This document shows positions 7,089 through 57,695 of a stretch of DNA of 64,000 bases, in pieces. Origin of the DNA: Octopus bimaculoides (Eukaryota); NCBI RefSeq assembly GCF_001194135.2, contig NC_069006.1, forward strand, positions 16,601,763-16,665,762. Direction: 5' to 3'. Position numbers and translations under genes: made by a program. The stretch's first letter is position 1. The number at the start of each line of letters is the position of its first letter. Under the pieces are notes generated by a model. That model was given only the letters and a program-made list of their open reading frames with translations, made no database searches and had not been told where the DNA came from.

Positions 7089-7217
7089 TTTAAGTTTTTC
7101 TAACTTCTTACGTCCTAGGTAACCTCGGCAGCAGGCTTGGAATTTGGTAATTGTTCCTGTGATCTTCTCATCACGAGCCACTTCAAGGCTAGTAAGTGAT
7201 CCAGCACGGAAGAAAAC
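7089..7217 (-). CDS. MYO18A: Myosin XVIII exon (converter end + IQ): [43 protein letters not shown]
   Basis: atattacag| acceptor, AAA|gtaagt donor, 129 nt, phase 0-0; VFFRAG plus IQ-like [12 protein letters not shown]; not in the ORF track. I could not find the next exon before position 1. Confidence 0.95.
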
Positions 7218-22161: not shown

Positions 22162-23346
22162 AATACAGATATCATTCTTTTGTCACTACTATTGCTGTCA
22201 TCCATGTATCTATTGCTCATGCTTCTAGCACTCATGGCCCTTACTGCTTATTTCTCAATTACTACCACTCCTTCTAAATCTCACTTTACTACTTTACTAG
22301 TGTGACTAAGGATGGTAGTGGATCTCGGTTGTTCACCATACAGTGCTTCCAGTATAAAACTAAGGATGCTAACACTCTCACTAACACTCCAGCCTCTTTC
22401 TCTCATCCGTTATCACTGCTTCACCCATATTGAGACATTTACTTAAAAACCCTCCACAGATTCACATGTACCCCATAAACTCTACCTGTACTCTCTTCTA
22501 AGTTGTTTCGTATTGACACTCATCATTCACCATCAAGGTTTATCTACTTCTTCTGATCCCTCACCCATCACATTCTCACTTCTATCCTCCCTGGTGCTGG
22601 TATCACAATAAAATGACCTCAGTGCATTCTGTTAAGAATGGAGAGAAGAGATCTTTTCAGTCTTGTCAAAGACATGGTAACCTCCCTAGTGTTGGTGCCT
22701 CAAAAATCAAAATTCACCTAATGCATTCAGAAAAGTAACTGTTGATGTTAGGAAGGACATCCAGTTATAGAAACCAAGCCAAAATGAAACTTATAAGCAA
22801 TGTGGTCATTTGATCTATTTGGGAGTGCAGCAACAAGGTATGGCACCTCTACAAGCATGGAAAGTAGATGTAAAGTAATGATGACTGTAATGATATATAA
22901 TCATACATATATACACATCTACATATATTCAGTCAACAGCTGAAATCTAGAGATGCTCAATATAAGGTCTTTATTGAGGACTAGGTCCATGGAGTAAAGA
23001 GTGGCTATAAGAGAAATCTAGGTGAACTGATACGAGATAGTCATGCAGATAAATACAATAAGGTTTAGATATATATAAATATACATACATATACATATAC
23101 ACAGAGAGACAACTAAAAAATTCATCCTCAAACCCAACAAATTCATTTACGTGTGTGTGTGTGTGTGTGTAGTTGTAGGCAGAGCAGTAAAAGTTAAACA
23201 TTGAGGAAGGGAATTTATGTGGGGTTTGGTGTAGAGTTGCAACCATCCAACTGTTGCACCCTTGCACAAACTGAACAAGATAAGCGGCAGAACACATGAG
23301 ACCGAGGAGCAGGGTAGGGCTTAAAAAAAAAAATGATAATACATAC

Positions 23347-24015
23347 ATTGAACTCTGAACCATGAAGCTGGGGTCCCATTTTATAGTGGGACCGTATAAG
23401 AAGCTGAGGAAGTTCAGCAAATTTGCCCTTGGTGTTGTTGTTGTTGTTGTTGTTGTTAACGTTATCTTCTTCATCACTGGAAGTAGTGATCCAACAGCGA
23501 AAGTTGTTGCATATGAAATCCTTGACCGAGTATTCCAGCGACAGAGACGTGTCACAAGAAGAGTAGGCAGAAGAGGAAGAAGAGAGGGAACTGGCTAAAG
23601 AGGAGCACGATTCGAAGGAAGAGAAGGAAGATTCCAAGGAAAGAAACCTGGTTTGGGGAGCAGCACTGTGAAGGCTGCTTAGATCCTCGTCAATGTAGGA
23701 AATAAGATCATCCTCATCTGAGAGCGGCAATTTGGTCTTGGTTTTCCCCTCACTTTTGTCTGGACTTTCAGCAGGTAGACATGGGTAAGACAGTAAAGGT
23801 AACACAGCTGTAGTAGTTTTATTTCCCTCGTCTGGCTCTTCGGCAAGGTATTGTGCAAGTAACAGGTTTTCGGAGGGCATGATAATCATGCAGGAAATAT
23901 AACTGTTCAGCTGATTGCTAAATTCAGGGTGAAGGACGGAGTCTGGCCACTTCACAGGACACCTTGAGCTCGTGCTTACTGGTAGAATTTGGTGGGTACT
24001 GATAAGTTCTTCCAT
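23347..24015 (-). CDS. Candidate alternative first coding exon of a motor-less MYO18 isoform (223 codons, Ser/Asp/Glu/Asn-rich, disordered-looking)
   Basis: Longest gap-free ORF in the window (266 codons); acaATGG Kozak context; long pyrimidine tract and cag acceptor (exon start 24031); phase-0 donor AAT|gtatgt at 23347; a second phase-0 donor CCA|gtaagc after codon 12 (23980). Confidence 0.6.
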
Positions 24016-25039
24016 TGTTGTATAACAGGGGCTGAGAGGGAAAGAGAGAGAAAGAGAGAGAGAGAGAGGGAGTGGATTGAAGGCAAAGACGAGTGGGGAG
24101 GGAGTGGAGAAGGGAGGTGTATGAAATATGTGGTGAAAAAAAATTAAGGGATACCAATATGAAACTGTGCCTCAAAGGAAATGGTGATTGAAGAACTGGT
24201 TGTTTGAGAGTGAAGGGTGCCTAAAGTTCCGTGGGAAGAAGGGTTCATAGTTATACCTTAACTACTGCAGGTAGCGAAACAGTGGATGGGACAGACAGGA
24301 TTGAAGGGACTGTGTGAGAAGAGTCTACCCCGGAAGACTGAGAAAGGTATTCTAACTAAACTGGCTTAGTTACAGTAGTAGCACAGAGAGAAGGGGAGAA
24401 GGCAGAAGAGAGAGTGTGAGAAAGAGAGAGAGGCAGGGAGGGGATTATCAAGTAAACAGACTGTGAATACCAACTAACAGACAAACAGCAGATGTGATGG
24501 AGGTGGAGGAGGTGAATGTAGGTGTAAGTGAATCAGATGGTAGTGAGACATCATCATCATCATCATGGGTACTGTACAGACAGTGTGTGTGTGTGTGTGT
24601 GTGTATGTGGGGGTGGGGGAAGGAAGGGTGGTTGTAGTGTGAAGGTAAGGACAACAGAAGAAGGTGAACATCAACAGAAAGTCTGGTGAGGAGACTGACA
24701 GAGGAAGTAGTTACAATGTTCAACAGCAGCGGCAATTATAACTACTACTACTACTACAGTAGCATTAACAGCGGCTACAACAACAGTAAAAACAACAGTA
24801 GTAAGAACAGTACTCCATCTCTATATATCAAAGTATAATGCTTGCATGGCTTATTGTGTGATTATAAACACACACACACACACATTGAAATACAGGTATA
24901 CTCAAATATACAGAGAATCTCCAACCACAAATTCTCATTTAGGGATCCTGGAAAGATGTCATGCCGCGTCCTTTGTTGACCACATATGGCACCTGAAGGA
25001 CAAAGGGAAGATCCTGGAAAAACTAAGTCCCTAAAGGAG

Positions 25040-35753: not shown

Positions 35754-35819
35754 CTGACTTAATCCAATGCGATAGTTGAGTTTATCGATATCCATGTGAT
35801 CCAGATAGTGTTTGATAAT
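35754..35819 (-). CDS. MYO18A: Myosin XVIII exon (converter): IIKHYLDHMDIDKLNYRIGLSQ
   Basis: ctctacag| acceptor, CAG|gtaagg donor, 66 nt, phase 0-0; YRIGLSQ precedes the canonical VFFR. Confidence 0.92.
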
Positions 35820-39669: not shown

Positions 39670-40408
39670 AATTTCTGAGATGATAAATTTTCATTTTTAT
39701 ACATTGANNNNNNNNNNGTGAATTTCTGAGATGATAAATTTTCATTTTTATACACTGACATATTTGGATTAGTGTCCTCATCTTGATTGTTGTAGTCAAA
39801 ATATTTTAGCCACTGTACCCTCCAGTTTTCTATAAATGCCCATCATATTTAGTAACATTCTCAGAATTTCAAACTAAACCCTTTACTAAATTCATGAAGC
39901 ATAGCTATTCTCCTACCTACACTGCCACTAGTTCTTTCTACCTTAACCAGAATATATATAGAGACGTATGTAAAAGCCAAAAATTTAACTAATGCCAAAA
40001 AAGTAAACCACAACCATGTATAAACTACAACACTAGACACCCAAGATTTAATATTTATCCCCACTTAAACATGAATGTTCTGTTAGGACAAACTATACTG
40101 TGGTAAATACCACGAGAGAAACTCATTGGCTACTACAGTATAGTTTGTTCTAGCAGGACATCCACCTTTAAGTGGGGATAAATATTACCTCTTGGTATTA
40201 ATGTTATCTCTGCCAAAGGGCAATTAATTAGATGATGGAAATTAAAAGACACAAAACGATTAGGTTTAAAACTCAATGTCAAGGAAAGGACATATTAAAT
40301 ACACTCAAAAACAACAAGATGGCCATAGCTAAAATGTCTTTGACCCTAGGTCTGCTCAACCAGGGCTGATTTGAAACTAAACAATAACAACAACAATAGT
40401 GTACTGAC

Positions 40409-40595
40409 CACTTGCAGTTTGACTTGCAGACAAATGGATTTTCGTTTCAAATTGGCTCCAGAAGAAGTCAAAGTTCGGCGCATACTGGCAGCTCGGCGCA
40501 GTGATGAAGTAGGTTTCTCTGCGCCAATGGAAGAACTACTCACTGTTGTAGAGATAGCACCCCGTATTGTTGTGAAAAGGTCACTTATGTTATTC
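40409..40595 (-). CDS. MYO18A: Myosin XVIII exon (loop 2 region): NNISDLFTTIRGAISTTVSSSSIGAEKPTSSLRRAASMRRTLTSSGANLKRKSICLQVKLQV
   Basis: attgcag| acceptor, GTG|gtcagt donor, 187 nt, phase 2-0; LRRAxSMR and KxKSxCxQxKLQV are MYO18 signatures. Confidence 0.94.
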
Positions 40596-40827
40596 CTGCA
40601 ATGATCAGAAGATAATTGTGTTAATTCAGTAAATTGGGATAAACAAAAATGTTAATATAAAAATGAATGCATGATAATGAGAATCTTAAGAGGGATTTAA
40701 TGTTATTTCAGAAATATTTATTTGATAATGATATTTAAACAAATGATTGAATGAGTGTTATTAGGTGATAATGCAATTTTGGTGATGATAATAATTTTCA
40801 GATGAATAGATGATAATGTAATTTCTA

Positions 40828-40986
40828 TAGGAGTGGCTGTGTGGTAAGTAGCTTGCTTATCAATCACATGGTTCTGGGTTCAGTCCCACTGCGTGGCACC
40901 TTGGGCAAATGTCTTCTACTATAGCCTCAGGCCGACCAAAGCTTTGTGAGTGGATTTGGTAGACGGAAACTGAAAGAAGCCTGTCG

Positions 40987-41021
<35 letters not shown>

Positions 41022-41103
41022 CTATGTTTGTGTGTCTGTGTTTGTCCCCCCCCCCCCCAATATCGCTTGACAACCAATGCTGGTGTGATTACGTCCCCGT
41101 AAC
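40828..41103 (+). mobile_element. SINE family A, 3'-truncated
   Basis: Head and core present; ends at acgtccccgtaactta. Confidence 0.8.
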
Positions 41104-41299
41104 TTATGATCATCAAAAATTATATCTATCTGCCTGTCTATATGTATGTATTGTGTTGGCCAAAAAGTCAAGAACTTTAATAAGTATCTAACTTCAACCT
41201 GTTCCTTGCACATGTACATTCATTAAATATTTGATACTTCAACATAGTTCAATACAAACTTGCTATGAAACAGGTTGTATTTGTGTGCTTGGAATCATC

Positions 41300-41700
41300 C
41301 TGAAAATGGAGATCTCAAATTGAACATTATCCACACCTCATGTTTTCTTTATTTCGAAAAAGGCAAGAAAGTGTGGAAACCTGCACAAAAATATGTGCTG
41401 CGTATGGAGAGGATGCTGTTATGGAATGTGTGTGCCAGAAGCTGTTTTCAAGGTTTCAATCAGAGAAATTTTTCAGTTCAAGATGCATCTCGCTCTGGCT
41501 GGCCAACTGAGATTAACAGTGACACCAACCCCTGTTTATACAACCAGGATGATCACAGATGTTCCTCAAATATCTGTGTTCCAAAACCATCTGCATTGAC
41601 TTGGTAATGTCAGCGGGCTTGATGTTTGGGTCCCATAACAATTGAATGAGGTTAACATTGCCCTACTGATTTCCATATGATAAGGCCTATTATGCATATG
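41300..41700 (+). mobile_element. Mariner transposase N-terminal fragment
   Basis: ICAAYGEDAV..CVCQKLFSRF...FSVQDASRSGWPTEI helix-turn-helix region. Confidence 0.75.
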
Positions 41701-41916
41701 CCTCAAAATAAGTGAGAGAGCTCAGGTAAGAATAAGGAGAAAAGAAGGGGTGAAGGGTTGATGAGAGAGTTAGATTTAGTGGCATCCTTGGTCACACTGG
41801 AAGCAATGTATGATGAACAAAAGATATCCACTGCTATCCGTCCTTTGTCACATTGGTGGCATAGTAAAGTGAGATCGAGAAGACAGTGTGACAGAGAGAT
41901 GCACAATGAGACACAG

Positions 41917-42077
41917 GGCATGAATGCTAGAGGCATGAGTGCTAGAGGCATGAGTGCTAGAGGCATGAGTGCTAGAGACATGAGTGCTAGAGGCATGAGT
42001 GCTAGAGGCATGAGTGCTAGAGGCATGAGTGTTAGAGGCACGAGTGCTAGAGGCATGAGTGCTAGAGGCATGAGTGA
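41917..42077. repeat. 15-bp minisatellite, about 10.7 copies (ggcatgagtgctaga)
   Basis: Direct inspection. Confidence 0.95.
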
Positions 42078-43638
42078 TAAATACAGAGATGATGAAGTCA
42101 TGAATGACATTGGTGTGATTGATAGGTAAGTGATAAGAGAGACAAGTGATAAAGAACAAGCAATAAGAAGGGTATGTGATAAAGATGTGTAATAAGAGGG
42201 ACGTGCAAAACTAAAATAACTACAGAGAAAATTAAACAACATCCGGGCTTCTTCTGGATGAAAGAACCAACACATACTACCATCATCAACCTTTGAAGAT
42301 TAAATTCTATTTTATTTATACAACATGATACAGTATTTCCTCCTTAACAGAAAACAGCCGTCAGATTTAGACTAACTAAAGCAACCATAACTTATCTCCC
42401 TTAACATTTTTTTTTTTTTACATGGCTTTTTTTTTCTTTTTCTTCTCCAAACCGTTTCTTCACACATTTTATCTCATCTATCTGATTCTCATAGAGAATT
42501 ACTGCTGTAGCTAGTCAGTTTTTTTTTTCGATAAAATTGCAACAGTCTTAAATAAAGTTAGTATCAGTTCTGATAATTCACGTAACCTTTCATTAATTTC
42601 TATTTATAGAAAAAAAAAAAAAAATCCCAGATTTATTATCAACATATTCAATACACACACGTGGAAACACCATTAACATTTTATCATAATTCTCCTACAA
42701 CTACTAATAATAATAATACTAATTATTATTATTATTATTACTACTACAACTACTGCTACTATTATTAAGGCAGTGAGCTAGCGGAATCATTGGTACACCA
42801 GGCAAAATGCTTAGTGGCGTTTCATCCATCTTTACATTCTGAGTTCAAATTCCACTGAGGTCGNNNNNNNNNNTTTATAGAAAAAAAAAAAAAAATCCCA
42901 GATTTATTATCAACATATTCAATACACACACGTGGAAACACCATTAACATTTTATCATAATTCTCCTACAACTACTAATAATAATAATACTAATTATTAT
43001 TATTATTATTACTACTACAACTACTGCTACTATTATTAAGGCAGTGAGCTAGCGGAATCATTGGTACACCAGGCAAAATGCTTAGTGGCGTTTCATCCAT
43101 CTTTACATTCTGAGTTCAAATTCCACTGAGGTCGACTTTGCCTTTCATCCTTTTGGGGCTGATAAAATAAGTGCTGATTGAGTACTGGGGGTCAACGTGA
43201 TTGACTAGCCAACTCCCTGAAATTGCTGGCCCTGTGCCAAAGTTTAAAACCAATATTATATACACTTACAAGGCAGCAAGCTAGCAGAATCTATAGCACG
43301 CTGGGAAAAATGCTAAGTGGCATTTCATTCATCTTTACATCCTGAGTTTAATTCCACGAAGATTGGCTTTGTCTTTCATCCTTTCAGGTTTGTTAAAATA
43401 AGTACCAGCTGGGGAACACATACGCCATTGAAACCGGAAAACCGGGCCCATTAAATTTAATTATATCTATGATTATATTAACTGACATATTCATTTATTT
43501 TATAATCTTGTAGGGTACAATTTGAAGGAGATTCAGCTATTATTGAATGACCACAGAGTAGCTTCTGCCTTGACCCACCAGAAAGACAAATGGGTTTGCT
43601 TGTTAAGAAGAGCAGAAGCCTTTAGAAAGAGAGGAAAG

Positions 43639-43680
<42 letters not shown>

Positions 43681-43710
43681 GATACAGCAGGTCTATGAGT
43701 GAGTGATTAC

Positions 43711-43870
43711 CTGTTGGAGTCTTGAAGGATGTGAATGGCAATTTTGCTAACACTATTCTCTCGACAAGCCTTCAACCATCCAGTAGCATTGTACTGGACT
43801 GGGTTGGTACCTTGGAAGTGATTCAAAATAAATGTGTGTCCAAGGGAGCCCTTCCTCAGCAAACTGTCAC
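43711..43870 (-). CDS. MYO18A: Myosin XVIII exon: (R)DSLLRKGSLGHTFILNHFQGTNPVQYNATGWLKACRENSVSKIAIHILQDSN(R)
   Basis: gttcag| acceptor, CAG|gtaatc donor, 160 nt, phase 1-2; F.L.H..GT..V.Y...GWL motif. Confidence 0.94.
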
Positions 43871-44761
43871 CTGAACAATTCACAAAAACACAAAACGTTA
43901 AGAACAATAGAATTCAATGTACCTAAAACAAACAATCAAAACGAAATGTACTTGGAATTTTACTAAATAGAACACTCAGTACATGATATATATATATATA
44001 TAAACAAAAATGAGCTAAGAGAAATAACTTAGAGTGGCCAGAAATAATTATGAAATGATTAAGAAAATAAAGAAAATAAAAAAATAAAGTCAAATACAGA
44101 GAGGGGAGGTCAATGGGATCAACTAATCCCCTTCTCTAGAAAACTGTCAACCATATGGTTCAGAAAAATGCTTATCAGCATTTCTTCTTCTAGGTCCTTA
44201 TATTATGAGTTCATATTCTGCTGAGGTTAACTTCACCTTTTGTCTTTTCAGAATCAATAAAAAAAATGATACCAGTCAAGTACAGGGGTCGGTGTAACTG
44301 ACTTACCCACTCACCTTTTCATTGCAAAAATCCTATTTTTTCTTTTGGATTAAATAAAAAAAGTAAACAACAGCTATGGGAGGGGGGGATACCATTAAGA
44401 ATGAGTCATAATTACACTTGACTAGTTGCAAGGTGATCAGTTGTTAGTATTTTATCTTCTTTTTCTTACAGGTGTTGTTCGTTACCGCTTTAACGGGAAT
44501 CCAGTAGAGATTATGTTTAGGCTATTACAACTATATCAGGAACATGCCACGATAAGGCTAATATTTCTGCAAGGTCAAGGCTGAGTTCAATGCTTGACCT
44601 TCCAAAAATAGTAAAGAAATATTCTCAAACCTCATCCTAACTGTCTTTCACAATGATAATGGAGCCTCAAAAATATCAGGTTTCAATCAAAAACATATTG
44701 GCTACAGTTGGATTTGGGGTTGCCCAGCAGGGAAAAGAGGGAGGAAGAGGATAGCACTTAC

Positions 44762-44906
44762 GTTTGACGGGATGGTCTCCATGATGAGTAAACAGTCGTT
44801 CCATGAAAGAATCTTCAGTGGCACCAGGAAAGATGGCTTCATCATCAAGTAACCAGAGAAGACCCTTTTTGTCAGCATCCCGTAAATCTTGGTTTGATGC
44901 TCTCAA
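44762..44906 (-). CDS. MYO18A: Myosin XVIII exon: LRASNQDLRDADKKGLLWLLDDEAIFPGATEDSFMERLFTHHGDHPVK
   Basis: ttttgatag| acceptor, AAC|gtaagt donor, 145 nt, phase 0-1; GLLWLLDDE motif. Confidence 0.94.
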
Positions 44907-45039
44907 CTATCAAAACAGACACATAAATGTAGGATTACCTTCATAATACTTTATCTCTGTCCTGCTACAATTTTTTTTAACAATACAGGCATTTAATATA
45001 ATAATAATAAATAAATTTTAATTTTATAATTAATCTATA

Positions 45040-45460
45040 GGCGTAGGAGTGGCTGTGTGGTAAGTAGCTTGCTTACCAACCACATGGTTCCGGTTCAGTC
45101 CCACTGCGTGACACCTTGGGCAAGTGTCTTCTACTATAGCCTCGGGCCGACCAAAACCTTGTGAGTGGATTTGGTAGACGGAAACTGAAAAGAAGCCCAT
45201 CGTATATATGTATATATATATATATGTGTGTGTGTGTGTCTGTGTGTGTATATGTTTGTGTGTCTGTGTTTGTCCCCACAACATCGCTTGACAACCGATG
45301 CTGGTGTGTTTACGTCCCTGTAACTTAGCAGTTCGGCAATAAGAGACCGATAGAATAAGTACTAGGCTTACAAAGAATAAGTCCTGGGGTCAATTTGCTC
45401 GACTAAAGGCAGTGCTCCAGCATGGCCACAGTCAAATGACTGAAACAAGTAAAAGAGTAA
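45040..45460 (+). mobile_element. SINE family A, full length
   Basis: Complete head, (TA)/(TG) core and tail. Confidence 0.9.
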
Positions 45461-46488
45461 TCTTTGAACTGTTGCCATGCTTGGACACCAGCATATTGAA
45501 GAGTATAGCAGTTGAGTATATTGACCGCAATACTTGACTGAAAGTAATTTTATCCATCTTGGAATGATGAAAAGTTGACCAGTAGTGAGATTTTTCACTC
45601 AGAACATAAAGGGAGATAAATCAAATACGATGAAGTATTTTTAACTGATGCTTTACCATATTTGCTGTGTGTGTGTGTGTGTGTGTGTATGTGTGTGAAT
45701 GAAATAGCACAAATGGGGGGGGGGGTAAGAAACAAACAGATGGACGACATGAGAGATTACAACAGGCATAAAAATTTGTAAAATGGAGGACAAAATGTAA
45801 ATACACAAAAAAAAAAAACAATACAAGTTGTGCACAACGAATAGTATGCCAAAAAAAAAAAAAAAAAAAAAGAAGGAAAAGAAGTAGGTTGACATTTTGA
45901 GTGAACTGGTTATCAAAGTATACTAAAAAGCAATATAAAAGCAATAAAAGAAATGATTCAGAAGATGTGACCAAAGGCTAAGACATACTCCAAATCCTCA
46001 TCAATCTTTTCAAGGACCACTTGAAGATCTTATCCAAGTGAAATGCATTGCTTCTATGTATTTTACTTAAATGAGACCCAGAGCCCTAAACAATAGTGCA
46101 AGCATTCTCTCTCTCCCAAGAACAATTGTCTGAAACACTGAATCTGTCAAACCCAAGGCAAAGAAACTTGCTGTATTTGTTTTTTTATCTATGATAAACT
46201 TTTGTGTTTCATTTAATTTTCAAAATACACATCTGTGTAACTTAGCAGTTCTGCAAAAGAGACTGATAGAATAAGTACTAGACTTTAAAAATAAAAATAA
46301 AAACTTGGGTTGATTTATTTGATTAAAACCCTTCAAGAGAGTGCCCCACCAAGGCCATAAACCAATGAATCAAACAAGAATTAAAGGAAAGAAATGTATC
46401 ACAGCAAATAAAATTGTTTATGGAAAGTGGAAAGGAAGGAAGGAAAGAAACATAGTTTGCAGGACATAAGCATTGTTCTTTTACTTAC

Positions 46489-46575
46489 CAGAGTTTGTTG
46501 CGGAGGTTTGTCTATCAAGAACACCAAAGCAGCAGGACTGGTGTTCACAAATTCGAAATCACATTCTATATTTTC
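46489..46575 (-). CDS. MYO18A: Myosin XVIII exon: ENIECDFEFVNTSPAALVFLIDKPPQQTL
   Basis: ttttctttttag| acceptor, CTG|gtaagt donor, 87 nt, phase 0-0; not in the ORF track. Confidence 0.92.
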
Positions 46576-47199
46576 CTAAAAAGAAAAGATATATATATAT
46601 ATATATATATANNNNNNNNNNNNNNNNNNNNNNNNNNNNNNNNNNNNNNNNNNNNNNNNNNNNNNNNNNNNNNNNNNNNNNNNNNNNNNNNNNNNNNNNN
46701 NNNNNNNNNNNNNNNNNNNNNNNNNNNNNNNNNNNNNNNNGCATATCTGGGACATTGCAAACAAAACGTAGACGAGAAAACACACAAGCCACATAGAGAA
46801 CATTCTACTTCATCAGCTACCCACGTTTTAACACCGGCGTTTCGAAGAGCTTGGGCAGGACACATCGTTAAAACGGCTCATCCCATGGACCGCAGATTAA
46901 ATTTGTATACGCAAATTAAATCTTGCCATGGAGGAATGTAGTGGCGGACAAAAAACAAGAGAGGAAAACAAACAGAAAAGGCTTTACGGCCAGACGAGAT
47001 GTATATATATAAAGAATTTTTGTGCATTATCGAACCTTTTCACTTTATATATATGTGTATATATTACACACACACAGGGTGTTTGGGTTAATTTTCTAAG
47101 TCTGCATACCAAAAATAAGAGTATTTTTAAAAAAATCAAAAAACATCAACTTGATTATGGCTAGGAGATAACAGTTTACTCAAAGCAGCCACCGTCTGC

Positions 47200-47640
47200 T
47201 TCTACCATGGACTCAAGACTGGCAAGGTCTTTGAACATCTCCTTGATCTTGGCCACCAGCTCACCCTTGGCATTGCAGGCAAAGTGGTTAGCATATTTCT
47301 CAACCACACCTTACGCATGGTAATCCAAGATATTACAAATGCCAAAATTAGGGGCTGGTGAAGTTGTAGAAATTCTGTGACAACCACTTCTGATTCTTTC
47401 CAGAGGTATGGCAAGGAACTGAATCGTGCTGCCTCACATATGGCTCTCCAGTAGCAAATGTCTCCAGCCAATGTTTGATCAAAGTCCCCAGCAGCTTCGC
47501 ATAGCCATCTGAACTGAGCCTAAGGCTCTGTTCAAAAATGTGGGGGATAAATTCTAGCATGTGGATGTGGTCAGAAGGCCTGTTGTGCACACATTCCTGC
47601 TGTGTGCATTCCATATCAGATGACTAGTAATTACTTAATT
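47200..47640 (-). mobile_element. Third, more diverged maT-like fragment
   Basis: IKHWLETFATGEPYVRQHDSVPCHTSGKNQKWLSQNF. Confidence 0.65.
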
Positions 47641-48289
47641 GGTTAATTAAATTCGTTGCTTGGTTTTACACCACTAACTGGCATTTGTTTCAAAAAACTA
47701 CCTGTAATTCAAAGGGCCATCCTCACCACAAACAGAATTAAAGTTCAAGTGTCTGAGGAATACTCAACCATTTACACTATAATAATACAATGAGTAGGTA
47801 GTTCTGTTGATGAAACTTGTGAAATATTCGTTGTGGAAACTTAGAAACTGTTGATCCCTTACAAATAAACATAATTAATGATTAATCGTGATAATTTGTT
47901 GTCAAAAAAACATCAGCATGCTTTTGACATCTTACAAATAACCTAAGAAGATATCATTTATAAAGTTTCAACACCTAAATTAGAATGCATATGACTCAAG
48001 AGAATCTAGAGGAGCGGTCCATGATACGAGGGGAGGGGGGCACAGAAATAAAAAAAGAAGACAAATTGTTGTGCTTAATTAAATGAAGGTTTCCAACTTT
48101 TTCTGCTGTTAATTATGAAGGCAAAAAAAAAAAGAAAGAAAAAGAGGCACAAACACTATTTTCTCCCTATAATAAAGATTGGGGTGAAGGGCAACAATTC
48201 TATAAATATGTTTTTAAAGGGGGCTCCTGATGTTTGTTAATGTCAGAAGCAGTGATCTCAAGTGCCCATAGACATAAAAAATAAAAATT

Positions 48290-48600
48290 TAGCTCAGTTG
48301 TGGTGTGGTGGAAAACTAGGTCAGTTGGTGTGGTGTGCAGCACAATTAGTCAAGTTGCTGTATGGTCACTAGGGTCAGATGGGATGAGATGTGAGGGTAC
48401 AGACAGGCCAGGTGTTGTGTGGTGTGATGTACAATTAGGTGCACTGTTGTGTGGTATGATGTATAATTAGGTCAACTGACATGGAATGAGGTGTAATTGG
48501 GTCAGTTGCAATTAGGTCAAGTCACAATTGGGTCCCACAAAATGTCTTGATGTGTGTGATATGTAATTAGGTCGGTTACTGTTGTGCTTAGTGTAAAGTG
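48290..48600. repeat. Degenerate tandem repeat with aattaggtca / gtgtggtgtg motifs
   Basis: Recurring motifs with irregular period. Confidence 0.6.
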
Positions 48601-48646
48601 TAATTAGCCAAGTGAACAATTATTGAAACTGCTGCTTTCAACTTGC

Positions 48647-48839
48647 CTGAGAATATCGATCCTGTTGCAGAGTGAAGGTTGCATCATGGAAGAATAACTG
48701 TAAGCGTTCTTGAATATAGTTGCAACAAAGGTCTTCAAATGTAGCACCTGAGTTACGACCACAAGTTGATGGATTCTGGAATCCAGGTGTGTCAAGAATT
48801 GTGATGGATCCAAGGTTGCGATAATTTGACATTAATGAT
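48647..48839 (-). CDS. MYO18A: Myosin XVIII exon (switch II/relay): (R)SLMSNYRNLGSITILDTPGFQNPSTCGRNSGATFEDLCCNYIQERLQLFFHDATFTLQQDRYSQ
   Basis: tttttag| acceptor, non-canonical CAG|gcaagt donor, 193 nt, phase 2-0; DTPGFQ and FEDLCxNY..ERLQ motifs. Confidence 0.93.
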
Positions 48840-49698
48840 CTAAAAATATAACAAAGGAAAATGAAATGGTTAATATTTAGATTTCAGAATATTACCAATT
48901 ATTATTATTATTATTATTATTATCATTATTATTGTTAATGTTACTATTGAGGTAGCAAGCTGGCAGAATCATAAGCACGCCAAGCAAAATACTTAGAGAC
49001 GTTCTGTCTGTCTTTATGGTCTGAGTTCAAATCCACTGAGGTTGACTTTGACTTTCATCTTTTCAGGGTCAATAAAATAAACAGTAGTTGAGAAAAGGGA
49101 TCAATATAACCAACTAGGCCCACCCCAACAAAAACTTCAGGCCTTGTGCCTATAGTGAAAAGGATTATTATTATTATCATTAAGGCAGTGAGCTGGTAAA
49201 ATCATTAGCATCGCAGAGAAAGTGCTTAGCAACATTTCTTCTGGTTTTATGTTCTGAGTTCAAATTCTACCAAGGCTAACTTTACCTTTTGTCTCTTCAG
49301 GTTGAGCAATGGGGTCAATGTAACTGACTAGCCCCTCCTTGAAAAATTTGTGATTTGTTCAAAAAATTACTCAAATGTATTTCGGACTTTTGTCTTCAAT
49401 GAACTGCTGTGCTATAAGTTTGATTATTTCAAACAATATTGAATTTGTGAGGTGTTATTTATTGCATTAAATGCTTATTGAATATTTAAAACCACAAAAT
49501 ATGTGCCGTTTACTGAGTTTTTTTTTTTTTTGTCGGTCATTGTACTTATGAGATATATTTTGCGAATAAAAAATATGCCAATGATATTGCACTACTTGTT
49601 GTCTTGACTACTTTGATGTGATGGTTACTCTGTTTGTGTCGTATGTCCCAAGTATAAAATATACTAATTATGATGAAATTACAGGAATGAAAACACCA

Positions 49699-49798
49699 GA
49701 AGTTACCAGTGGCGAAATTACTGGGGGTGAAATTACCAGGGACAAAGTCACCAGGGATGAAATTTCCAGTGGCGAATTTTCCAGGGGTGAAATTACCC
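49699..49798. repeat. Degenerate 15-bp repeat (gaaattaccaggggt), about 6.7 copies
   Basis: Direct inspection. Confidence 0.85.
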
Positions 49799-50052
49799 AC
49801 ATTCATTACATGATCCCTCAATGTGCTAGAAATAGGAAAAATACCGTCCTTAAATCTCGCACTACTATAGTCCTTTAAAAAAAGGACAGTCTGGAGAATG
49901 TGATTGTTGATAAAGCGTGTCCTAAAAAGAAAGGATATATTGTCATGTTTGCAATGCGTTTGATCTAACTGAATCAAAACTGATTTTATCAAAAAAAAAA
50001 AAAAAAAAAAAAAAAGTGAAAATGGAGCATAAAGTAAATGTTTCATACTAAC

Positions 50053-50175
50053 CTATTTATTAAACCAACCAGGACACTGAATAGTTCTGTGTAAAGACCT
50101 GTGAGGAAAGCTTCAAGAGCATCAGTTGCAGAAGATCCAGAGTCTCCTGTATGCCTATCAGCAGCATTTGAGATC
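50053..50175 (-). CDS. MYO18A: Myosin XVIII exon: (R)ISNAADRHTGDSGSSATDALEAFLTGLYTELFSVLVGLIN(R)
   Basis: tctctgcag| acceptor, TAG|gttagt donor, 123 nt, phase 2-2; LY.ELF..LV.LINR helix. Confidence 0.93.
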
Positions 50176-50249
50176 CTGCAGAGAAAAAACATGGCAACAT
50201 CCTCAAACATTTCATCAAACAACAGCAGAAATTCTGTAGGGAAAAAAAC

Positions 50250-50740
50250 ATTATCAAACATTTTCCCTTGAACATAAACAGCAGTAAGACAATATCACGA
50301 AGCATGTATCTTGAATTTAAGCAGTTTTCACCCAGCCTGCGTCTGCTTGCATACAGTGCGCTAGGCTGACAGTGCTGCACGCTTTGCGGCTCCACGAACC
50401 TCAATATCTCTCTGTGTGATATGTCTGCCGAAAAAGTCCTCTTTGTTTTCTTGGGACATTGCCAAAAGAGCCTGGGTGCAATTGACTCATTTCTGCTTCT
50501 GAAAAGGTGTGAACATCTGGGAATCCATTGTGCAGACAACTTCTGCATGTGCAAATGGTTGTGAATGATTTTTTCTATGGACTCTATACTTGTCTTCACT
50601 TCTTGGGCTTGTTGTGAAACAAATACGAGAACGGAGAAACAACAAAGCGAACAATCTAATGAAGGGAGCCTCTACAGCAGAAGTGTTCACTCAAGATGGT
50701 GGCAGTAAAATTTTGAAACAAAATTGTTTATCTTCAAAAT
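50250..50740 (-). mobile_element. Internally deleted mariner copy nearly identical to part of 52030-53060
   Basis: 50424-50600 matches about 52553-52735 almost base for base. Confidence 0.85.
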
Positions 50741-50764
50741 ATATATCAGAATGTGAAATGTTGA

Positions 50765-51206
50765 TGAATATGTTATAGATTAAGTTACACTGAATATATT
50801 ATAGATTAAGTTACACTGAATATATTATAGATTAAGTCACACTGAATATATTATAGATTAAGTCACACTGAATATATTATAGATTAAGTTACACTGAATA
50901 TATTATAGATTAAGTTTCACTGAATGTATTATCGATTAAGTTACACTGAATATATTATCGATTAAATTACACTGAATATATTATCGATTAAGTTACACTG
51001 AATATATTATCGATTAAGTTACACTGAATATATTATAGATTAAGTTACACTGAATATATTATAGATTAAGTTACACTGAATATATTATAGATTAAGTTAC
51101 ACTGAATATATTATAGATTAAGTTACACTGAATATATTATAGATTAAGTTACACTGAATATATTATAGATTAAGTTACACTGAATATATTATAGATTAAG
51201 TTACTC
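50765..51206. repeat. 26-bp minisatellite, 17 copies (tgaatatattatagattaagttacac)
   Basis: Exact 26-bp periodicity counted directly; 442 bp. Confidence 0.97.
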
Positions 51207-51315
51207 TGCCTTACAAATCCTATTGTGTAGATTCAACTGACTTATCCCTTTCTCAGTCAAATTTGTGACAAACAGTGTTGGTGCAAGCAATCCTAACTCA
51301 AACACATAGTCATAC

Positions 51316-51463
51316 CTCATAGAAGCACTTCGGGTTAAAGTACCACTAGATCCTGCTGATGGGCTGAAGATTGTACGTGCAAGTTCCTCCACTTTGATGC
51401 CCAGAAGGTTTGCAGCTTTCTGTGCAGCTGCAGGTTTTGCAAATTGTGCTTTATTATTGGTTC
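51316..51463 (-). CDS. MYO18A: Myosin XVIII exon: GTNNKAQFAKPAAAQKAANLLGIKVEELARTIFSPSAGSSGTLTRSASM(R)
   Basis: atttcag| acceptor, GAG|gtatga donor, 148 nt, phase 1-2. Confidence 0.92.
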
Positions 51464-51650
51464 CTGAAATGACACACAAAATAAACGGAACTTCATAAAA
51501 ATGAAACAAAACGAAAATTACTTAACAAAAGGAGAGGAATTGCTTCTAGATTCATTGCTTCCTCCTGAGAGCACCAACAAAATAATTTTCTCAAAATTAT
51601 TGAGAGAAGACTTAATAATTCAGACAATTAATGAGGAATGTTAGACATAC

Positions 51651-51795
51651 CTTTAACAGCTCCTGCAGTTTCAAGATGGTAAATGGCTGCCAATACATAG
51701 AATACTGCCTTCATTTCCTCAGGTGAAAATCCCAGAACTTCCATAGCATTGGTTACTTTGGCCCAAGACTGTGCTGCTTTTTGTCTGTCTTCAGT
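51651..51795 (-). CDS. MYO18A: Myosin XVIII exon: TEDRQKAAQSWAKVTNAMEVLGFSPEEMKAVFYVLAAIYHLETAGAVK
   Basis: ttattacag| acceptor, AAG|gtatgt donor, 145 nt, phase 0-1; LAAIYHL motif typical of MYO18. Confidence 0.95.
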
Positions 51796-52029
51796 CTGTA
51801 ATAAATAAGACATTTGAGTGGACACTCAAGAGGGACATAAAATAAATAGAGGTATGGAGTGAAAGACTTGTTGGTGTAAAGTGGAAGGTTTGATGATGTG
51901 GAGTACTACGAGGGATGTTCATTAAAGATTTCCCCTGACCCACTTCCCAAGGACTGGAATAAATGAAACTTGGCATAATTATTAGTCCTTCTCTACATAG
52001 CCACCACCAATGGTGACACACTTCTCCTA

Positions 52030-53060
52030 TCGCTTTATGCAGTTGTGAAGACTTCGTCTGTAGAAGTCAGTAGGTTGTGTCTGGAGTCAAGACTTTACCT
52101 CGGAAATAAGTTCATCATCATCCAAAAATTGCTTCTCCTTAAAAAGAAAAAAAAACTTCATGGTAGGAAAGAGATGGAAATCAGATGTTGCGAGGTCAGG
52201 AAGGATTTCATAGCCACAGGAGTGTGCTTTCATCTGGGCAACAGGTGTATTGTGAAATGGGGAGTTGCCTTGGAGGCAAACTCCTTTGGTCAGTATGCCA
52301 TGCCTCTCTGCTTTGATGGCACCCACAATTTCTGCAGTAGAGAAGCATAATATGCCCCATTATGATGCCCTTTGCCAGAAAATCCATCATCACTACTCTG
52401 CGCTGGTCTCAAAAGATTGTGAGCATCACTTTGCCTGCTGAGAGTTGGACACAAGCCTTCTTTGGAGGTGGTGAGTTATCATGCTTCCATTGTTTCGACT
52501 GGACTTTAGTCTCAGGATCATAGTGGTGGACCCATGTTTCCTCCTGTGTGATAAGTCTGCCGAAAAAGTCCTCTTTGTTTTCTTGGCACATTGCCAAAAG
52601 AGCCTGGGTGCAATTGACTCATTTCTGCTTCTGAAAAGGTGTAAACATCTGGGAATCCATTGTGCAGACAACTTCTGCATGTGCAAATGGTTGTGAATGA
52701 TTTTTTTTCTATAGACCCTATACTTGTCTTCACTTCTTGGGCTAGTTGCTGAATAGTTATGTGGCGATCCTCAAAAATGACAACTTCCATGTTATAGATG
52801 GTGTCGTCATTAATGGCAAAATGTGGTCACCCAGGAATAGGAGCAGTTTCTACTGATGTCTAACTTCATTTGAAATGGTAATGCCAGTGCTTGACTACAT
52901 CTTATGATGGTGCATCGTCATCATAAACTTCTTTCATCTCATCGAAAGTTTCTTTTGGTGTACGACCTTTCAAGTATAAGAACCTGATCACTGATCTGCA
53001 TTCAATTGCCTCCAGTATAACACCTTAGTCCACTTCAGCAGCCGTAAAAGACAAATGAAT
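52030..53060 (-). mobile_element. Mariner transposase pseudogene
   Basis: EDRHITIQQLA, KLSAQWIPR, ITQEETWVHHYDPETK.QSKQW, SAGKVMLTIF, DLATSDFHLFP motifs across frameshifts. Confidence 0.9.
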
Positions 53061-53269
53061 ACTAGTAGAAAGCTGAAATTTACAATGTGACATGTAGAGA
53101 CATATATGATTACACCTGTATAACTTCTGTTTCCTTCAACGACCAGAAGTGAGTCAGGGGAAATCTTTAATGAACACCCTTTGCATGTTAGGTAGTATGA
53201 AAGGGGACATTTGATGTGATGTAGATGGAGAGGCATGTTTCATAATGTGCCAGGTTTGCTGGAACAAAG

Positions 53270-53578
53270 TGCAATGTTTGATGGCATGGAGTGCAATGTT
53301 TGATGGTATGGAGAGCAATGTTTGATAGCGTGAAGTGCAATGTTTGATGGTATGGAGAGCAATGTTTGATAGCGTGAAGTGCAATGCTTGGTGGTGAGGA
53401 GTTTGATGCTCGATAGTGTGGAGTGCAATGTATGGCAGTACAGAGTGTAGTGTTTGGCAGTGTGTAGTGCAATGTTTGATGGTATGGAGAGAAATGTTTG
53501 ATAGTGTGTAGTGCAATGTTTGGTGATATAGAATGGAGTATTTAGTGGTGTGAGGTGGAATGTTTGAGGTAGTGTAGA
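53270..53578. repeat. Degenerate 22-bp minisatellite (gcaatgtttgatggtatggaga), about 14 copies
   Basis: Direct inspection; alternating A/B units at the left end. Confidence 0.85.
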
Positions 53579-55832
53579 ACAACTTGTGGTTCAAAACTTC
53601 ATCACACTCCAAACATCAGTTTTACTGGACAAGTCACTTTATTCTACATGATTCAGTTCACCTAACTTTGAAAAAAAGTCACCCATAGCAAATCTAGACA
53701 TAGGAGGTAGATTTACCACCAAGTTAAATACAACAGTAACCAGAGGTAGAGAATAACTTAATAAAGTCCTGTGATTCACAACAATATCATTAGTAACTAC
53801 AGATTACATCAATTTCCACCCTCATCCATACACACTCTAAACCAGACCCACCCTACTACATTTTCTATCTCAATTCATTGTCATTCCAGAGAATCCACCA
53901 AAAAGCTTGTCTTCTTAAATTTACTTCTTCCCCCCAAATTTATCTCTAATTATAAACTTGAACAAAAATAAACTGAAATAGTATCAACAGCCACACCCAA
54001 CATTTAAGGCCTTTAATTCCAGGCAGACCATCAGAAATTAAACAGTCATAAGTGCTCCTCTCTAGAATAATTCAACCACAGAAAATTAATTTATTCTTGA
54101 TTAATGGGAAAAAAAGTATAATTTCAGGTGTAGTGGGAGGAGTGGTGATTAGAAAATGCAACATTAAGACTCATTACATCTTACTTTACACATCCATGCA
54201 GAAACACAAGCACCATTACACACACACACACACACCAATAAACACACAGTACAAACATTCTTTCATATACATACACAGTACAAACATTTCCCCCCACCCA
54301 CCCCCACCTGGAACACACAAATACTCACACAGAAAATATTCCTCCTCACATACATTCTTCTTCACACAAACACACAATACCACATGCACAAACACAGACA
54401 TATAGCCATACAATATAGATATTATCCTCCATACATATATCCACACAGTACAAACAAGTAAATGTTGACTTTTTCATTACTACATTTCTAATTAAACACA
54501 CGACTTATAGGCATTGCAGCTAATTTTGAAAGTAACCAAAACTTGTTATTAAAGTTGATGTTTGGAAGGTATTTTTAAATTAACGATGATAACGGGCTTT
54601 AAATATACATGCAACTTTACAGATATCATCAATTAGAAAACTTTATTTCTCAAGACCCAAAAATGGTTTTATTTTGCTTTACCAAGTTTCTTTTGTAGGT
54701 CCAATCTACATTATGAATACTTCAAAATGAGAGGTTTTACATCATAGAACCAGTGACTATAAGCATATTGCAATTGAAAGGACTTTAAATACTGTTTCTA
54801 ACAAAGGAACAAGGCCTCAAATTTTGAGGATAGGCATAACTAAGAAAGGTGACCCCAGAATTAGAGCCAAATTAATTAACTTTGGCAGGATTTGAATGCA
54901 GAATGTAAAGGGATATCACTGAATACCAGAAAGCATATGCTTCACGGCCACAAAACTTGGGGCAGGCTATCTATGATTAACTTGACTGGTATTTAATTTA
55001 AAACCTTGAAAGGATGGCTAACAACATTAACCTGGCTGGGATTTGAACCATAACTTTAAAATTTAATACAAGGCCATGAATTTTAAAGAGATGAAGTTAA
55101 TGAAATCAACCTCAGCATATCACTGGTAACACTTTCAATCTTAGAGAGATGAAATACAAAGTCAGGCACAGAGGGATTTGGACTTAGAATGTAAAGAGAT
55201 GAAACTGAATAGTTGAATGGTATTCAATCTGATACAAAGAAAGAAATGACTGAGACATCATCCAAATGATGAACAACAGTTAAGTCAGTGTTAATATGTT
55301 TAATGCGTTAAGCATTAAAAAGCTAACTAAATAGATTACCAATGTAGTGAAGTAAATATCAATATTAGTCAATGAATAATATTATCATAATGTCTTTCCA
55401 TATGAGAGGCAACTCAGGGCATATCTCAGTCTTATGACATCATCAGTGAAATACAGACTCCACAGTTCTTGTTAAAGTGGTAATAAAGGAACGAATCACT
55501 ATACAGATGTACAAGATTGTGCCATTGACTGACATAAGAAAATACGAATATTTTGAGAATAACTCTGAGACTCCATCTGCATACAAAAACAAGAGTTAAG
55601 ATATTTAATGAAGAGAGCAGTTAAGATATGTAATAAAGGGAGCAGCAATATAGTACATGGGGCTGAGCATTCCATAGACACATATACCTTACATATAATC
55701 CTCAGGTAGACTGAAAGTGACACTGTGTATGACAAGGCAAGACATGTGAATTACAGTTGTCTATCTAATTACACACCTAATGCAGTCAGCTTGGATATGT
55801 TTCACTGAAGCTAACCACTCATGACTTACTGC

Positions 55833-55871
<39 letters not shown>

Positions 55872-55879
55872 GTACTTAC

Positions 55880-55940
55880 TCTTTGAAGAGGTGTCATGTA
55901 TGTATTCTGCTCATTCAGAGTGTTCAGCTGCAATTCATTC
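55880..55940 (-). CDS. MYO18A: Myosin XVIII small exon: (R)NELQLNTLNEQNTYMTPLQR
   Basis: ttttcctttacag| acceptor, AGA|gtaagt donor, 61 nt, phase 2-0, bridges both neighbours in frame; too short for the ORF track. Confidence 0.88.
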
Positions 55941-56419
55941 CTGTAAAGGAAAAAAAAATTATAAAGATATAAAGCACAGGCATGGTTGAGTGGTTAAGAC
56001 GTTTGCTTCCCAACCACATGGTACTAGGTTCAGTCCTACTGCATGACACATTGGGCAAGTTTCTTCTGCTATCGCCTTGTAAGTGGATTTGATATGCACA
56101 CACAAAGTGTATCCTAGTTTTAGAACAAGTTCACCTTGTTCTGCATATCATAAAAGGGTTGACAACAGGAAGGGCATCTAACCATAAAACACTACCTCAG
56201 TAATCCTATCCAGCTCATACCTACATGGAAACCAGGCATAAGATAACAAAGGTGATTTTACATATCTACATATAGTTATGAAGCAGATGATTCAGAAATT
56301 TTCAACACCTGTGAATCTTCAGGCAACGAAAAGATAATTGAAGAAACCTAGTTTGTGATTTACAGAACCACAGCAGCAGGAGTGGGGAAGAGAGTGGGCA
56401 AATGGTCCTATTTTCCTCA

Positions 56420-56725: not shown

Positions 56726-56842
56726 TTACACATGCCGCAGTCACTGTATATGTATCTGTGTGTATATATACAAAGAGATATAATATATTATATGCCTGCA
56801 TATAATTTTTTCCATCCTTTCATTGTTCTCTTATATTTTTAA

Positions 56843-56930: not shown

Positions 56931-56937
56931 CATTCAT

Positions 56938-57345: not shown

Positions 57346-57392
<47 letters not shown>

Positions 57393-57600: not shown

Positions 57601-57695
57601 ATAGATATTTTGTTAAAAATTTCTTCACAAGGAATCATTGGGAAAAATTTTCTTTACTTTAGGTGAGAACCACAGAGAACACATAAACAACATAC

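What the first reader, a model, noticed from the sequence alone, without database searches (positions are those of the whole stretch)
23347..24031. 223-codon disordered exon as an alternative MYO18 N-terminus, with a second donor giving a 12-residue version
Seen: the longest gap-free ORF in the window, with optimal Kozak (acaATGG), a long pyrimidine tract plus cag 16 nt upstream, Ser-rich and acidic tracts, and an in-frame (AAC)n giving poly-Asn. The acceptor at 24031 is phase 2, so it cannot join the phase-0 IGLSQ exon in frame and needs its own 5' UTR exon (possible donor AAG|gtataa near 24257). Two phase-0 donors (23980 and 23347) would yield MEELISTHQILP- or 223-aa leaders on VFFRAG. Inference: an alternative 5'-splice-site switch toggles a large phosphorylatable disordered region on a tail-only myosin.
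Basis: partly seen in the sequence, partly recalled or inferred. Interest (0 to 1): 0.72.

Follow-up and report, generated by a model that had tools for sequence, protein, structure and literature searches.

The report
Motor-less myosin-18 from an intronic promoter

Summary
The ORF is real. It runs 24015..23347 on the minus strand, 223 codons to the donor TTCAAT|gtatgt. Its stop-free stretch of 318 codons beats all 200 simulated windows.

RNA contigs from five of five contig runs join 23347 directly to the VFFRAG/IQ exon at 7217. This form accounts for 17-47% of junction depth, against the canonical join from the last motor exon (35819..35754).

The exon is coding and conserved:
- Against a sister species about 6% diverged, 24 of 37 substitutions fall at third codon positions, and dN/dS is about 0.18.
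- Indels in the coding part are multiples of three. Those in the 5' UTR are single bases.
- Cuttlefish (Sepia) carry a 183-codon homologue that ends at the same SEFN|gtatgtatt donor.

The host gene is a class XVIII myosin.

- The acceptor at 24031 is not used. Transcripts run unspliced to about 24330-24420, so this is a first exon with its own intronic promoter.
- The 23980 donor (12-residue leader) appears in no run.

This is a headless myosin-18 isoform, analogous to molluscan catchin/myorod, Drosophila myosin rod protein and headless Myo10. Motor-less myosin-18 isoforms were already predicted in Drosophila. Its function is inferred, not shown.

The parts
23347..24015 (-). Coding part of the alternative first exon: 223 codons, from MEELIST to GSEFN, ending in phase 0 at the donor TTCAAT|gtatgt.
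   Evidence: ORF. RNA contigs cover it continuously. Against organism B, dN/dS is about 0.18 and 24 of 37 substitutions are at codon position 3. The Sepia homologue has 183 codons and the same donor.
24016..24420 (-). Contiguous 5' UTR and transcription start region. The main start is near 24330-24350. Ragged contig 5' ends lie at 24333, 24347, 24396 and 24420. Weak transcription in X11 reaches about 24700.
   Evidence: In X11, depth is about 400 from 23345 to 24330, then 18.5 over 24329-24612 and 8.5 over 24583-24696. X1-X3 have no coverage at 24456-24531. The contig ends carry no extra upstream letters, so they are not a splice boundary.
24144..24248 (-). The only upstream ATG in the main 5' UTR. 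It opens a 34-codon uORF, out of frame, that ends about 130 nt before the main ATG.
   Evidence: Sequence scan. Function not tested.
24032..24072 (-). It is not used and is simply part of the 5' UTR.
   Evidence: Contigs in X3, X4 and X5 run uninterrupted from 23345 to 24333-24396. In X11 depth is equal on both sides.
23974..23985 (-). CCA|gtaagc, the candidate second donor after codon 12. The motif is present and unchanged in organism B, but no use is detected.
   Evidence: Exactly two upstream partners of exon 7217 in X1, X2, X3, X4, X11 and X22-24. No break in the exon contig at 23980.
23430..23459 (-). In-frame (AAC)n encoding NVNNNNNNNN. It is lineage-specific: cuttlefish have ISEDDANTS at this position.
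   Evidence: Organism B is a net 15 nt (five codons) shorter somewhere in a stretch hidden by repeat depth, most likely here.
23481..23514 (-). The most conserved motif of the leader, ICNNFRCW[I/V]T. It follows a conserved SSAYSSC serine tract.
   Evidence: Identical in octopus and Sepia. One of only two DNA-level similarity islands (30 nt, 90%) between the two genomes.
7089..7217 (-). Shared exon encoding [43 protein letters not shown]: the end of the converter plus an IQ-type motif. It is the acceptor for both first-exon choices.
   Evidence: The next exon (LQQTAISCIQ...) lies outside the window.
35754..35819 (-). Last motor-domain exon of the full-length form (IIKHYLDHMDIDKLNYRIGLSQ), phase 0. 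It is the canonical partner of exon 7217.
40349..62475 (-). Upstream motor-domain exons of the host class XVIII myosin. They include the P-loop GRSGSGKT (about 62300) and switch II DTPGFQ (about 48750). The headless transcript skips all of them.
   Evidence: Pfam Myosin_head, E = 3e-80. Best named relatives are myosin-18, myosin XVIII and myosin-XVIIIa. The motifs match those described for myosin-18 in PMC3122231.

Best explanation
An alternative promoter lies in the roughly 28.5-kb intron between the last motor exon (35819..35754) and the VFFRAG/IQ exon (7217..7089) of a cephalopod class XVIII myosin gene. It drives a first exon of about 1 kb (about 24330-24420 down to 23347).

That exon carries a 5' UTR of about 315-400 nt and a 223-codon ORF. 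The ORF is spliced in phase 0 onto VFFRAG. The product is a 'headless' myosin-18: a lineage-conserved leader of 223 residues, rich in serine and acidic residues, followed by the last converter residues, the IQ motif and the tail. It lacks the PDZ region and the whole motor.

Shown here: the transcript structure, its abundance relative to the full-length junction (0 to about 47% depending on the run), purifying selection on the ORF, and conservation in cuttlefish.

Inferred: the protein dimerises or co-assembles through the shared tail with full-length myosin-18 or myosin-2 filaments. There it would act as a motor-less spacer or competitor, with the leader (acidic Ser clusters of CK2 type, the ICNNFRCW motif) serving as a regulatory or docking module, as in catchin/myorod.
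For: - Junction: contigs join 7217 directly to ...GGTTCAGAGTTCAAT in X1, X2, X3, X4 and X11. The reciprocal loose end at 23345 reads into TTTCTTCCGTGCTGG....
- Word depth, alternative versus canonical: 6.9:32.7, 14:25, 6.2:20.2, 11.6:29.1 and 424:486.
- The intron at 23192-23329 has no coverage, so this is not pre-mRNA.
- The 5' UTR is contiguous and depth drops 20-fold at about 24330.
- Organism B: 37 substitutions in the coding part, split 24/9/4 over codon positions 3/1/2 (binomial p = 9e-5). dS = 0.178 and dN = 0.032, with no stops. Coding indels are 3, 3 and a net 15 nt, against 1-nt indels in the UTR.
- Sepia pharaonis and congeners have a 183-codon ORF, 37% identical, that ends at the identical SEFN|gtatgtatt. 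It lies on the same strand just downstream of a Myosin_head gene model.
- Host gene class: plus the motifs.
Against: - No protein-level evidence.
- The transcription start is inferred from contig ends and depth, not from capped 5' ends.
- Tissues are unknown because the runs are coded.
- The tail exons lie outside the window, so the full product was not reconstructed.
- The class of the Sepia neighbour myosin was not verified. Its canonical flanking exons are not within 10 kb on either side.
- A 34-codon uORF precedes the main ATG.
- The functional part of the statement rests on analogy only.
Confidence: 0.85

Rival explanations
1. The exon is internal or second, entered through the acceptor at 24031 from its own 5' UTR exon. 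A regulated choice between donors 23980 and 23347 toggles a 12-residue versus a 223-residue leader.
For: Both motifs exist. The 64 nt around the ATG and the 23980 GT (23970-24033) carry no substitution between organisms A and B, where about 4 would be expected. Sepia also has a phase-0 CAA|gtgagc five codons after its ATG.
Against: Contigs run through 24031 and 24257 at unchanged depth. Exon 7217 has only two upstream partners in eight runs, including one with alternative-form depth about 424. The exon contigs do not branch at 23980.
Confidence: 0.04
2. The exon is a non-coding alternative 5' leader. Translation of the headless mRNA starts at a downstream ATG in the tail, and the 223-codon ORF is incidental.
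For: No homologue outside cephalopods and no Pfam domain. The sequence is low-complexity. A uORF is present.
Against: dN/dS is about 0.18 with a strong third-position bias and only 3n indels in the ORF, against 1-nt indels in the UTR. The ORF, its phase and its donor are kept between octopus and cuttlefish although the flanking DNA is unalignable. The ATG context is strong.
Confidence: 0.06
3. The ORF is an independent single-exon gene, or an intronic transcript unrelated to the myosin. The Sepia pharaonis annotation treats it this way (CAE1229497.1).
For: The Sepia genome annotation lists a 159-aa stand-alone 'unnamed protein product'.
Against: That model simply reads through the donor into the intron (...SEFN|VCITLHK...). 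In the window species, every contig covering the exon's 3' end continues into exon 7217, and the intron beyond 23345 has no coverage.
Confidence: 0.03

Closest known systems
Catchin / myorod of molluscan catch muscle (Yamada et al. 2000, as cited in PMC3912159; PMC4410989)
   Same: It is a headless product of a myosin heavy-chain gene in molluscs. [quoted passage not shown] That N-terminal domain is phosphorylatable and conserved among molluscs.
   Different: Its host gene is the class II muscle MHC, not class XVIII. It joins within the rod, whereas here the end of the converter and the IQ motif are kept. No sequence similarity was detected: the only hit in 1.84 billion representative proteins was cuttlefish. 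Filament association and phosphorylation are not tested here.
Predicted motor-less isoforms of Drosophila myosin-18 (Mhcl, CG31045; PMC3122231)
   Same: Same myosin class. N-terminally truncated isoforms lacking the PDZ or the motor domain share the tail.
   Different: Those are gene-model predictions, mentioned without a characterised unique leader. Here the leader is a 223-residue ORF under purifying selection and conserved across coleoid cephalopods. Homology between the leaders was not tested.
Drosophila myosin rod protein (Standiford et al. 1997, as cited in PMC3912159)
   Same: An alternative start inside the Mhc gene gives a tail-only protein with a short unique N-terminus.
   Different: It is class II. 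Its N-terminus is a 5' extension of a shared exon and is not conserved even among close relatives, unlike this leader.
Headless Myo10 (PMC6345916)
   Same: An unconventional myosin with a tissue-restricted motor-less isoform made from an internal start. It is thought to act without, or against, the full-length motor.
   Different: It is from a vertebrate and a different class, and it has no substantial unique N-terminal domain.
Vertebrate Myo18A alpha/beta/gamma N-terminal isoforms (PMC11112018)
   Same: Same class. Alternative N-terminal extensions decide localisation, and the shorter beta form is proposed to act as a negative regulator by heterodimerisation.
   Different: All three vertebrate isoforms keep the motor domain.

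Membership tests
Class XVIII myosin (host gene) | The motor domain is most similar to class XVIII myosins | tested here: met
   Concatenated motor exons give Pfam Myosin_head at 3e-80. The top named relatives are 'myosin-18', 'myosin XVIII', 'Myosin XVIIIA' and 'myosin-XVIIIa [Elysia marginata]', at E down to 1e-139. Many carry PDZ plus PF24556 plus Myosin_head.
Class XVIII myosin (host gene) | Divergent nucleotide-site motifs: P-loop GRSGxGK[ST], and switch II with Pro and with Glu replaced by Gln (DxPGFQ) | tested here: met
   The window encodes GRSGSGKT and LDTPGFQNP. The features are described for myosin-18 in PMC3122231.
Class XVIII myosin (host gene) | N-terminal PDZ domain and C-terminal coiled-coil tail | not testable with these tools
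   Both lie outside the 64-kb window. The exon after 7089 is not in the window.
Headless myosin isoform from an intragenic promoter or alternative first exon | The transcript starts downstream of the motor exons and is not preceded by them | tested here: met
   The 5' UTR is contiguous. Contig 5' ends are ragged at 24333-24420 with no extra letters. Depth drops 20-fold at about 24330 in X11. The evidence comes from contigs, not from capped ends.
Headless myosin isoform from an intragenic promoter or alternative first exon | A unique coding exon is spliced in frame onto shared neck and tail exons | tested here: met
   The junction 23347>7217 is phase 0 on both sides and present in five of five contig RNA runs.
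Headless myosin isoform from an intragenic promoter or alternative first exon | The protein is made and associates with myosin filaments | not testable with these tools
   No proteomic or localisation data. Coding selection argues indirectly for translation.
Catchin / myorod | Product of the class II muscle MHC gene, with a homologous N-terminal domain | tested here: not met
   The host is class XVIII. The leader has no detectable relative other than cuttlefish ORFs.
   Only the 23347 donor is joined to 7217. No 23980 junction appears in X1-X4, X11 or X22-24.

The most novel reading that the evidence does not exclude
Coleoid cephalopods evolved a dedicated N-terminal module (SSAYSSC serine tract, ICNNFRCW motif, acidic CK2-type clusters). 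It would turn the myosin-18 tail into an abundant, phospho-regulated, motor-less filament component. That would be a class XVIII counterpart of catchin/myorod, arisen independently in molluscs, perhaps tuning filament mechanics in particular tissues. It has so far been overlooked, or mis-annotated as an orphan protein in Sepia.
Probability: 0.25. Interest if true: 0.6.

Novelty: new member of a known kind. Interest (0 to 1): 0.45.

Why it matters
Myosin-18 has almost no motor activity and is thought to work as a scaffold that co-assembles with myosin-2 filaments. The reason its N-terminal variants matter is still an open question.

A naturally occurring tail-only isoform has three useful properties. 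It is abundant, reaching nearly half of the junctions in one library. It is under purifying selection. It is conserved from octopus to cuttlefish. Together these give a clean natural experiment on what the tail does without the head.

It also adds a second, independent molluscan case of the catchin-type strategy of making a headless myosin from an intronic first exon. On the practical side, it corrects an orphan gene model in the Sepia pharaonis annotation, and it shows that the isoform choice is made at the promoter, not at a splice donor.

Tried and rejected
- A word-indexed search of 5.8 billion proteins with the 223-aa leader found nothing. The same database returned only two short hits for the canonical exons, and all myosin hits were shorter than 800 aa. 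Its silence therefore says little about whether an isoform is annotated.
- Pfam on the leader: no family.
- Single-sequence AlphaFold2: pLDDT 31 throughout, so it says nothing either way.
- The PDB holds no myosin-18 motor. The best hits are class II, so the class was settled by named homologues instead.
- The canonical neighbouring exons were not found within 10 kb either side of the Sepia exon.
- The accession of the Sepia run appears in no paper held.
- No paper links cephalopods with myosin-18.
- A splice acceptor at 24338 (tttctcag|) was considered as the exon start and rejected. Contigs in X2, X3 and X5 pass through it, and the contig ends are ragged.

Full report
**What is in the sequence.** On the minus strand an ATG at 24015 (context acaATGg) opens a reading frame that stays open for 266 codons. 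After 223 codons it meets a consensus donor, TTCAAT|gtatgt, with last exon base 23347 in phase 0.
- a CT-rich tract and cag ending 16 nt before the ATG (24034-24032);
- an in-frame (AAC)8;
- a second GT at CCA|gtaagc after codon 12 (23980);
- AAG|gtataa near 24257.

The stop-free stretch (318 codons, 24171..23218) is longer than in any of 200 Markov-simulated windows of the same composition, which had mean 148 and maximum 217. The peptide is 18% Ser and 13% Asp+Glu, with net charge -16.

**The host gene.** Stop-free minus-strand segments upstream (62475 down to 35754) encode a myosin motor. Concatenated, they hit Pfam Myosin_head at 3e-80. Their best named relatives are 'myosin-18', 'myosin XVIII', 'Myosin XVIIIA' and 'myosin-XVIIIa [Elysia marginata]', and many of these carry PDZ plus PF24556 plus Myosin_head.

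The window encodes the P-loop GRSGSGKT and switch II DTPGFQ. These are the divergences described for myosin-18: GRSGAGKS, a proline, and Glu>Gln in DIxGFE (PMC3122231). The PDB holds no class XVIII motor, so its best hits are class II.

The last motor exon is 35819..35754 (IIKHYLDHMDIDKLNYRIGLSQ). The next shared exon is 7217..7089 (VFFRAG...[18 protein letters not shown], an IQ-type motif). The exon after that lies outside the window.

**Transcript evidence.** Many RNA runs of the same organism hold the exon.

*Upstream partners of exon 7217.* Laying contigs on this exon shows exactly two upstream partners in X1, X2, X3, X4 and X11. One is the canonical motor exon. The other is ...GGACCCCAGCTTCATGGTTCAGAGTTCAAT, the 3' end of the 223-codon exon. 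The reciprocal loose end at 23345 reads into TTTCTTCCGTGCTGGATCAC.

Word depth, alternative versus canonical:

| Run | Alternative | Canonical |
|---|---|---|
| X1 | 6.9 | 32.7 |
| X2 | 14 | 25 |
| X3 | 6.2 | 20.2 |
| X4 | 11.6 | 29.1 |
| X11 | 424 | 486 |

That is roughly 17-47% of junction depth. In three raw-read runs (X22-24) only the canonical junction was seen (9, 14 and 12 reads), and the exon has almost no coverage. Use of this exon therefore differs strongly between libraries. The tissues are coded, so they are unknown to me. The intron just downstream (23192-23329) has zero depth, so this is spliced mRNA and not pre-mRNA.

Single contigs run from 23345 through both sites to 24333 (X4), 24347 (X5) and 24396 (X3), and X2 has a contig covering 24039-24420. 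These contigs begin at ragged positions with no extra upstream letters.

In X11, depth is 401-453 over 23345-24330 on both sides of 24031. It then falls to 18.5 over 24329-24612 and 8.5 over 24583-24696. X1-X3 have no coverage at 24456-24531.

The exon is therefore a first exon. Its main start is around 24330-24420, and weak starts reach about 24700. The 5' UTR is contiguous, about 315-400 nt, and holds one out-of-frame uATG at 24248 that opens a 34-codon uORF. This places a promoter inside the intron. It rests on contig ends and depth, not on capped 5' ends.

*The short form.* No contig or read joins 23980 to 7217 in any of the eight runs. The exon contigs do not branch at 23980. Contigs can drop rare variants. 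Even so, in X11, where the long form has depth about 424, a short form would have to be very rare to be missed.

**Is the ORF coding?** DNA contigs of a related species hold the orthologue. This is organism B, which shares 14% of 31-mers and is about 6% diverged. The contig has 62 substitutions over 23151-24044. I could read 37 of them in the coding part:
- They split 24/9/4 over codon positions 3/1/2 (binomial p = 9e-5).
- 22 changes are synonymous and 15 non-synonymous.
- dS = 0.178 and dN = 0.032, giving dN/dS of about 0.18 (Fisher p = 5e-7).
- No stop codon arises. The same changes read in the other two frames alter 24 and 32 residues, against 14 in frame.

Indels in the coding part are -3 (23576) and +3 (23836). 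There is also a net 15 nt hidden by repeat depth, most likely in the AAC tract. The three indels in the 5' UTR are single bases. The intron (10 in 175) and the UTR (20 in 307) diverge at about the same overall rate as the exon. The signal is therefore codon-specific selection and not general conservation.

**Deep conservation.** An exhaustive phmmer search of 1.84 billion representative proteins gave one hit, P0109 (E = 5e-10). Its cluster contains ORFs from several cuttlefish, including Acanthosepion (Sepia) pharaonis CAE1229497.1, an 'unnamed protein product'.

The underlying DNA is L001, which equals L002:8278-11067 at 99.9% identity. It carries a 183-codon ORF from an ATG to ...SEFN|gtatgtatt. 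This is the same donor and phase as in the window, and the predicted proteins simply read on into the intron.

Identity to the window peptide is 37%. The conserved blocks are SSAYSSC, ICNNFRCW[I/V]T, PQL, SH and SEFN, plus acidic Ser clusters. At the DNA level only two islands align: the ICNNFRCW codons, and 22 identical bases across the donor. The poly-Asn is absent in cuttlefish.

In the S. pharaonis assembly the ORF lies on the same strand, about 0.75 kb beyond the end of a gene model whose product hits Myosin_head. I could not verify the class of that myosin. Its canonical flanking exons are not within 10 kb on either side.

**Interpretation.** The shown facts add up to a headless myosin-18. 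An intronic promoter and first exon replace the PDZ region and motor with a cephalopod-conserved 223-residue leader. The last converter residues, the IQ motif and the tail are kept.

What it does is inference. The tail is shared, so the protein should dimerise or co-assemble with full-length myosin-18 or with myosin-2 filaments. There it would act as a motor-less spacer or competitor. A similar proposal exists for the PDZ-less Myo18A-beta, as a negative regulator by heterodimerisation (PMC11112018). The leader, with CK2-type sites such as SDEDD and SSDEED and the invariant ICNNFRCW motif, would be the regulatory or docking part.

'Disordered' is not established. The charge-hydropathy value is borderline, and AlphaFold2 without an alignment tells us nothing.

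**Comparison with known systems.**
- Catchin/myorod is the closest mechanistic precedent. It is a molluscan headless product of the class II MHC gene with a long, conserved, phosphorylatable N-terminal exon (PMC3912159, PMC4410989).
- The Drosophila myosin rod protein and headless Myo10 (PMC6345916) are further examples.

The kind is therefore known. What is new is this member: a conserved coding leader in cephalopods. No paper in the library links cephalopods with myosin-18. An automatic annotation of the window species may already list the isoform; I could not check this.

**Verdict.** The core interpretation, an alternative N-terminus on a tail-only MYO18, is supported by transcripts and by selection. 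The proposed acceptor, the separate UTR exon and the two-donor switch are not supported. The regulated step is promoter choice.

Noticed in passing
L002:9813-10480 (Sepia pharaonis CAHIKZ030000616.1); protein P0110: The annotated 159-aa 'unnamed protein product' CAE1229497.1 is an artefact. It is the homologous exon read through its donor into the intron (...SEFN|VCITLHK...), and the model starts at an internal Met.
   Followed up: yes
window 23970-24033: There is no substitution between organisms A and B in the 64 nt spanning the ATG, the first 15 codons and the unused GT at 23980. About 4 would be expected at 6% divergence. This may reflect a constraint on translation start or on something else.
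   Followed up: partly
window 23458-23506, 23629-23655, 23848-23875: In the high-depth run X11 the exon is assembled in pieces that break at these places, and neighbouring bins show doubled or tripled depth. This suggests sequence variants in the RNA (SNPs or editing) that the contig view could not resolve.
   Followed up: no
window 24136: A one-base poly-T length difference in the 5' UTR is polymorphic in X11 RNA (depth 215 of 1356). The same difference is fixed in organism B.
   Followed up: no
window 16962-17516 (+), with adjoining ORF 16476-16961: A reverse-transcriptase ORF (Pfam RVT_1, 1e-17) lies antisense to the myosin gene inside the large intron. It is a retrotransposon fragment.
   Followed up: partly
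window, e.g. 21350-21800, 34034-34660, 37076-37696, 40863-41219, 45033-45389, 56842-57447, 59900-60425: A short interspersed repeat recurs many times on both strands, often beside N gaps. It translates to ...GFGRPEAIVEDTCPRCHAVGLNPEPCGW... and is flanked by (CA)n-type tracts.
   Followed up: no
window 41703-42275 and 53154-53612: Two minisatellite-like tandem arrays give long spurious ORFs (MPLALMPLAL..., and SNIALHTIKHCT... units).
   Followed up: no
window 50063-50671 and 52211-52826 (-): Two copies of another repeat share ...IEKIIHNHLHMQKLSAQWIPRC...FRSRNESIAPRLFWQC.KKTKRTFSAD.... They have no Pfam hit and are probably a degraded DNA-transposon family.
   Followed up: partly
window 24034-24068: This CT-rich 35-mer is shared, with A>G at 24052, with a very highly expressed unrelated transcript (depth in the tens of thousands). 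That transcript swamps read-laying over this spot.
   Followed up: no
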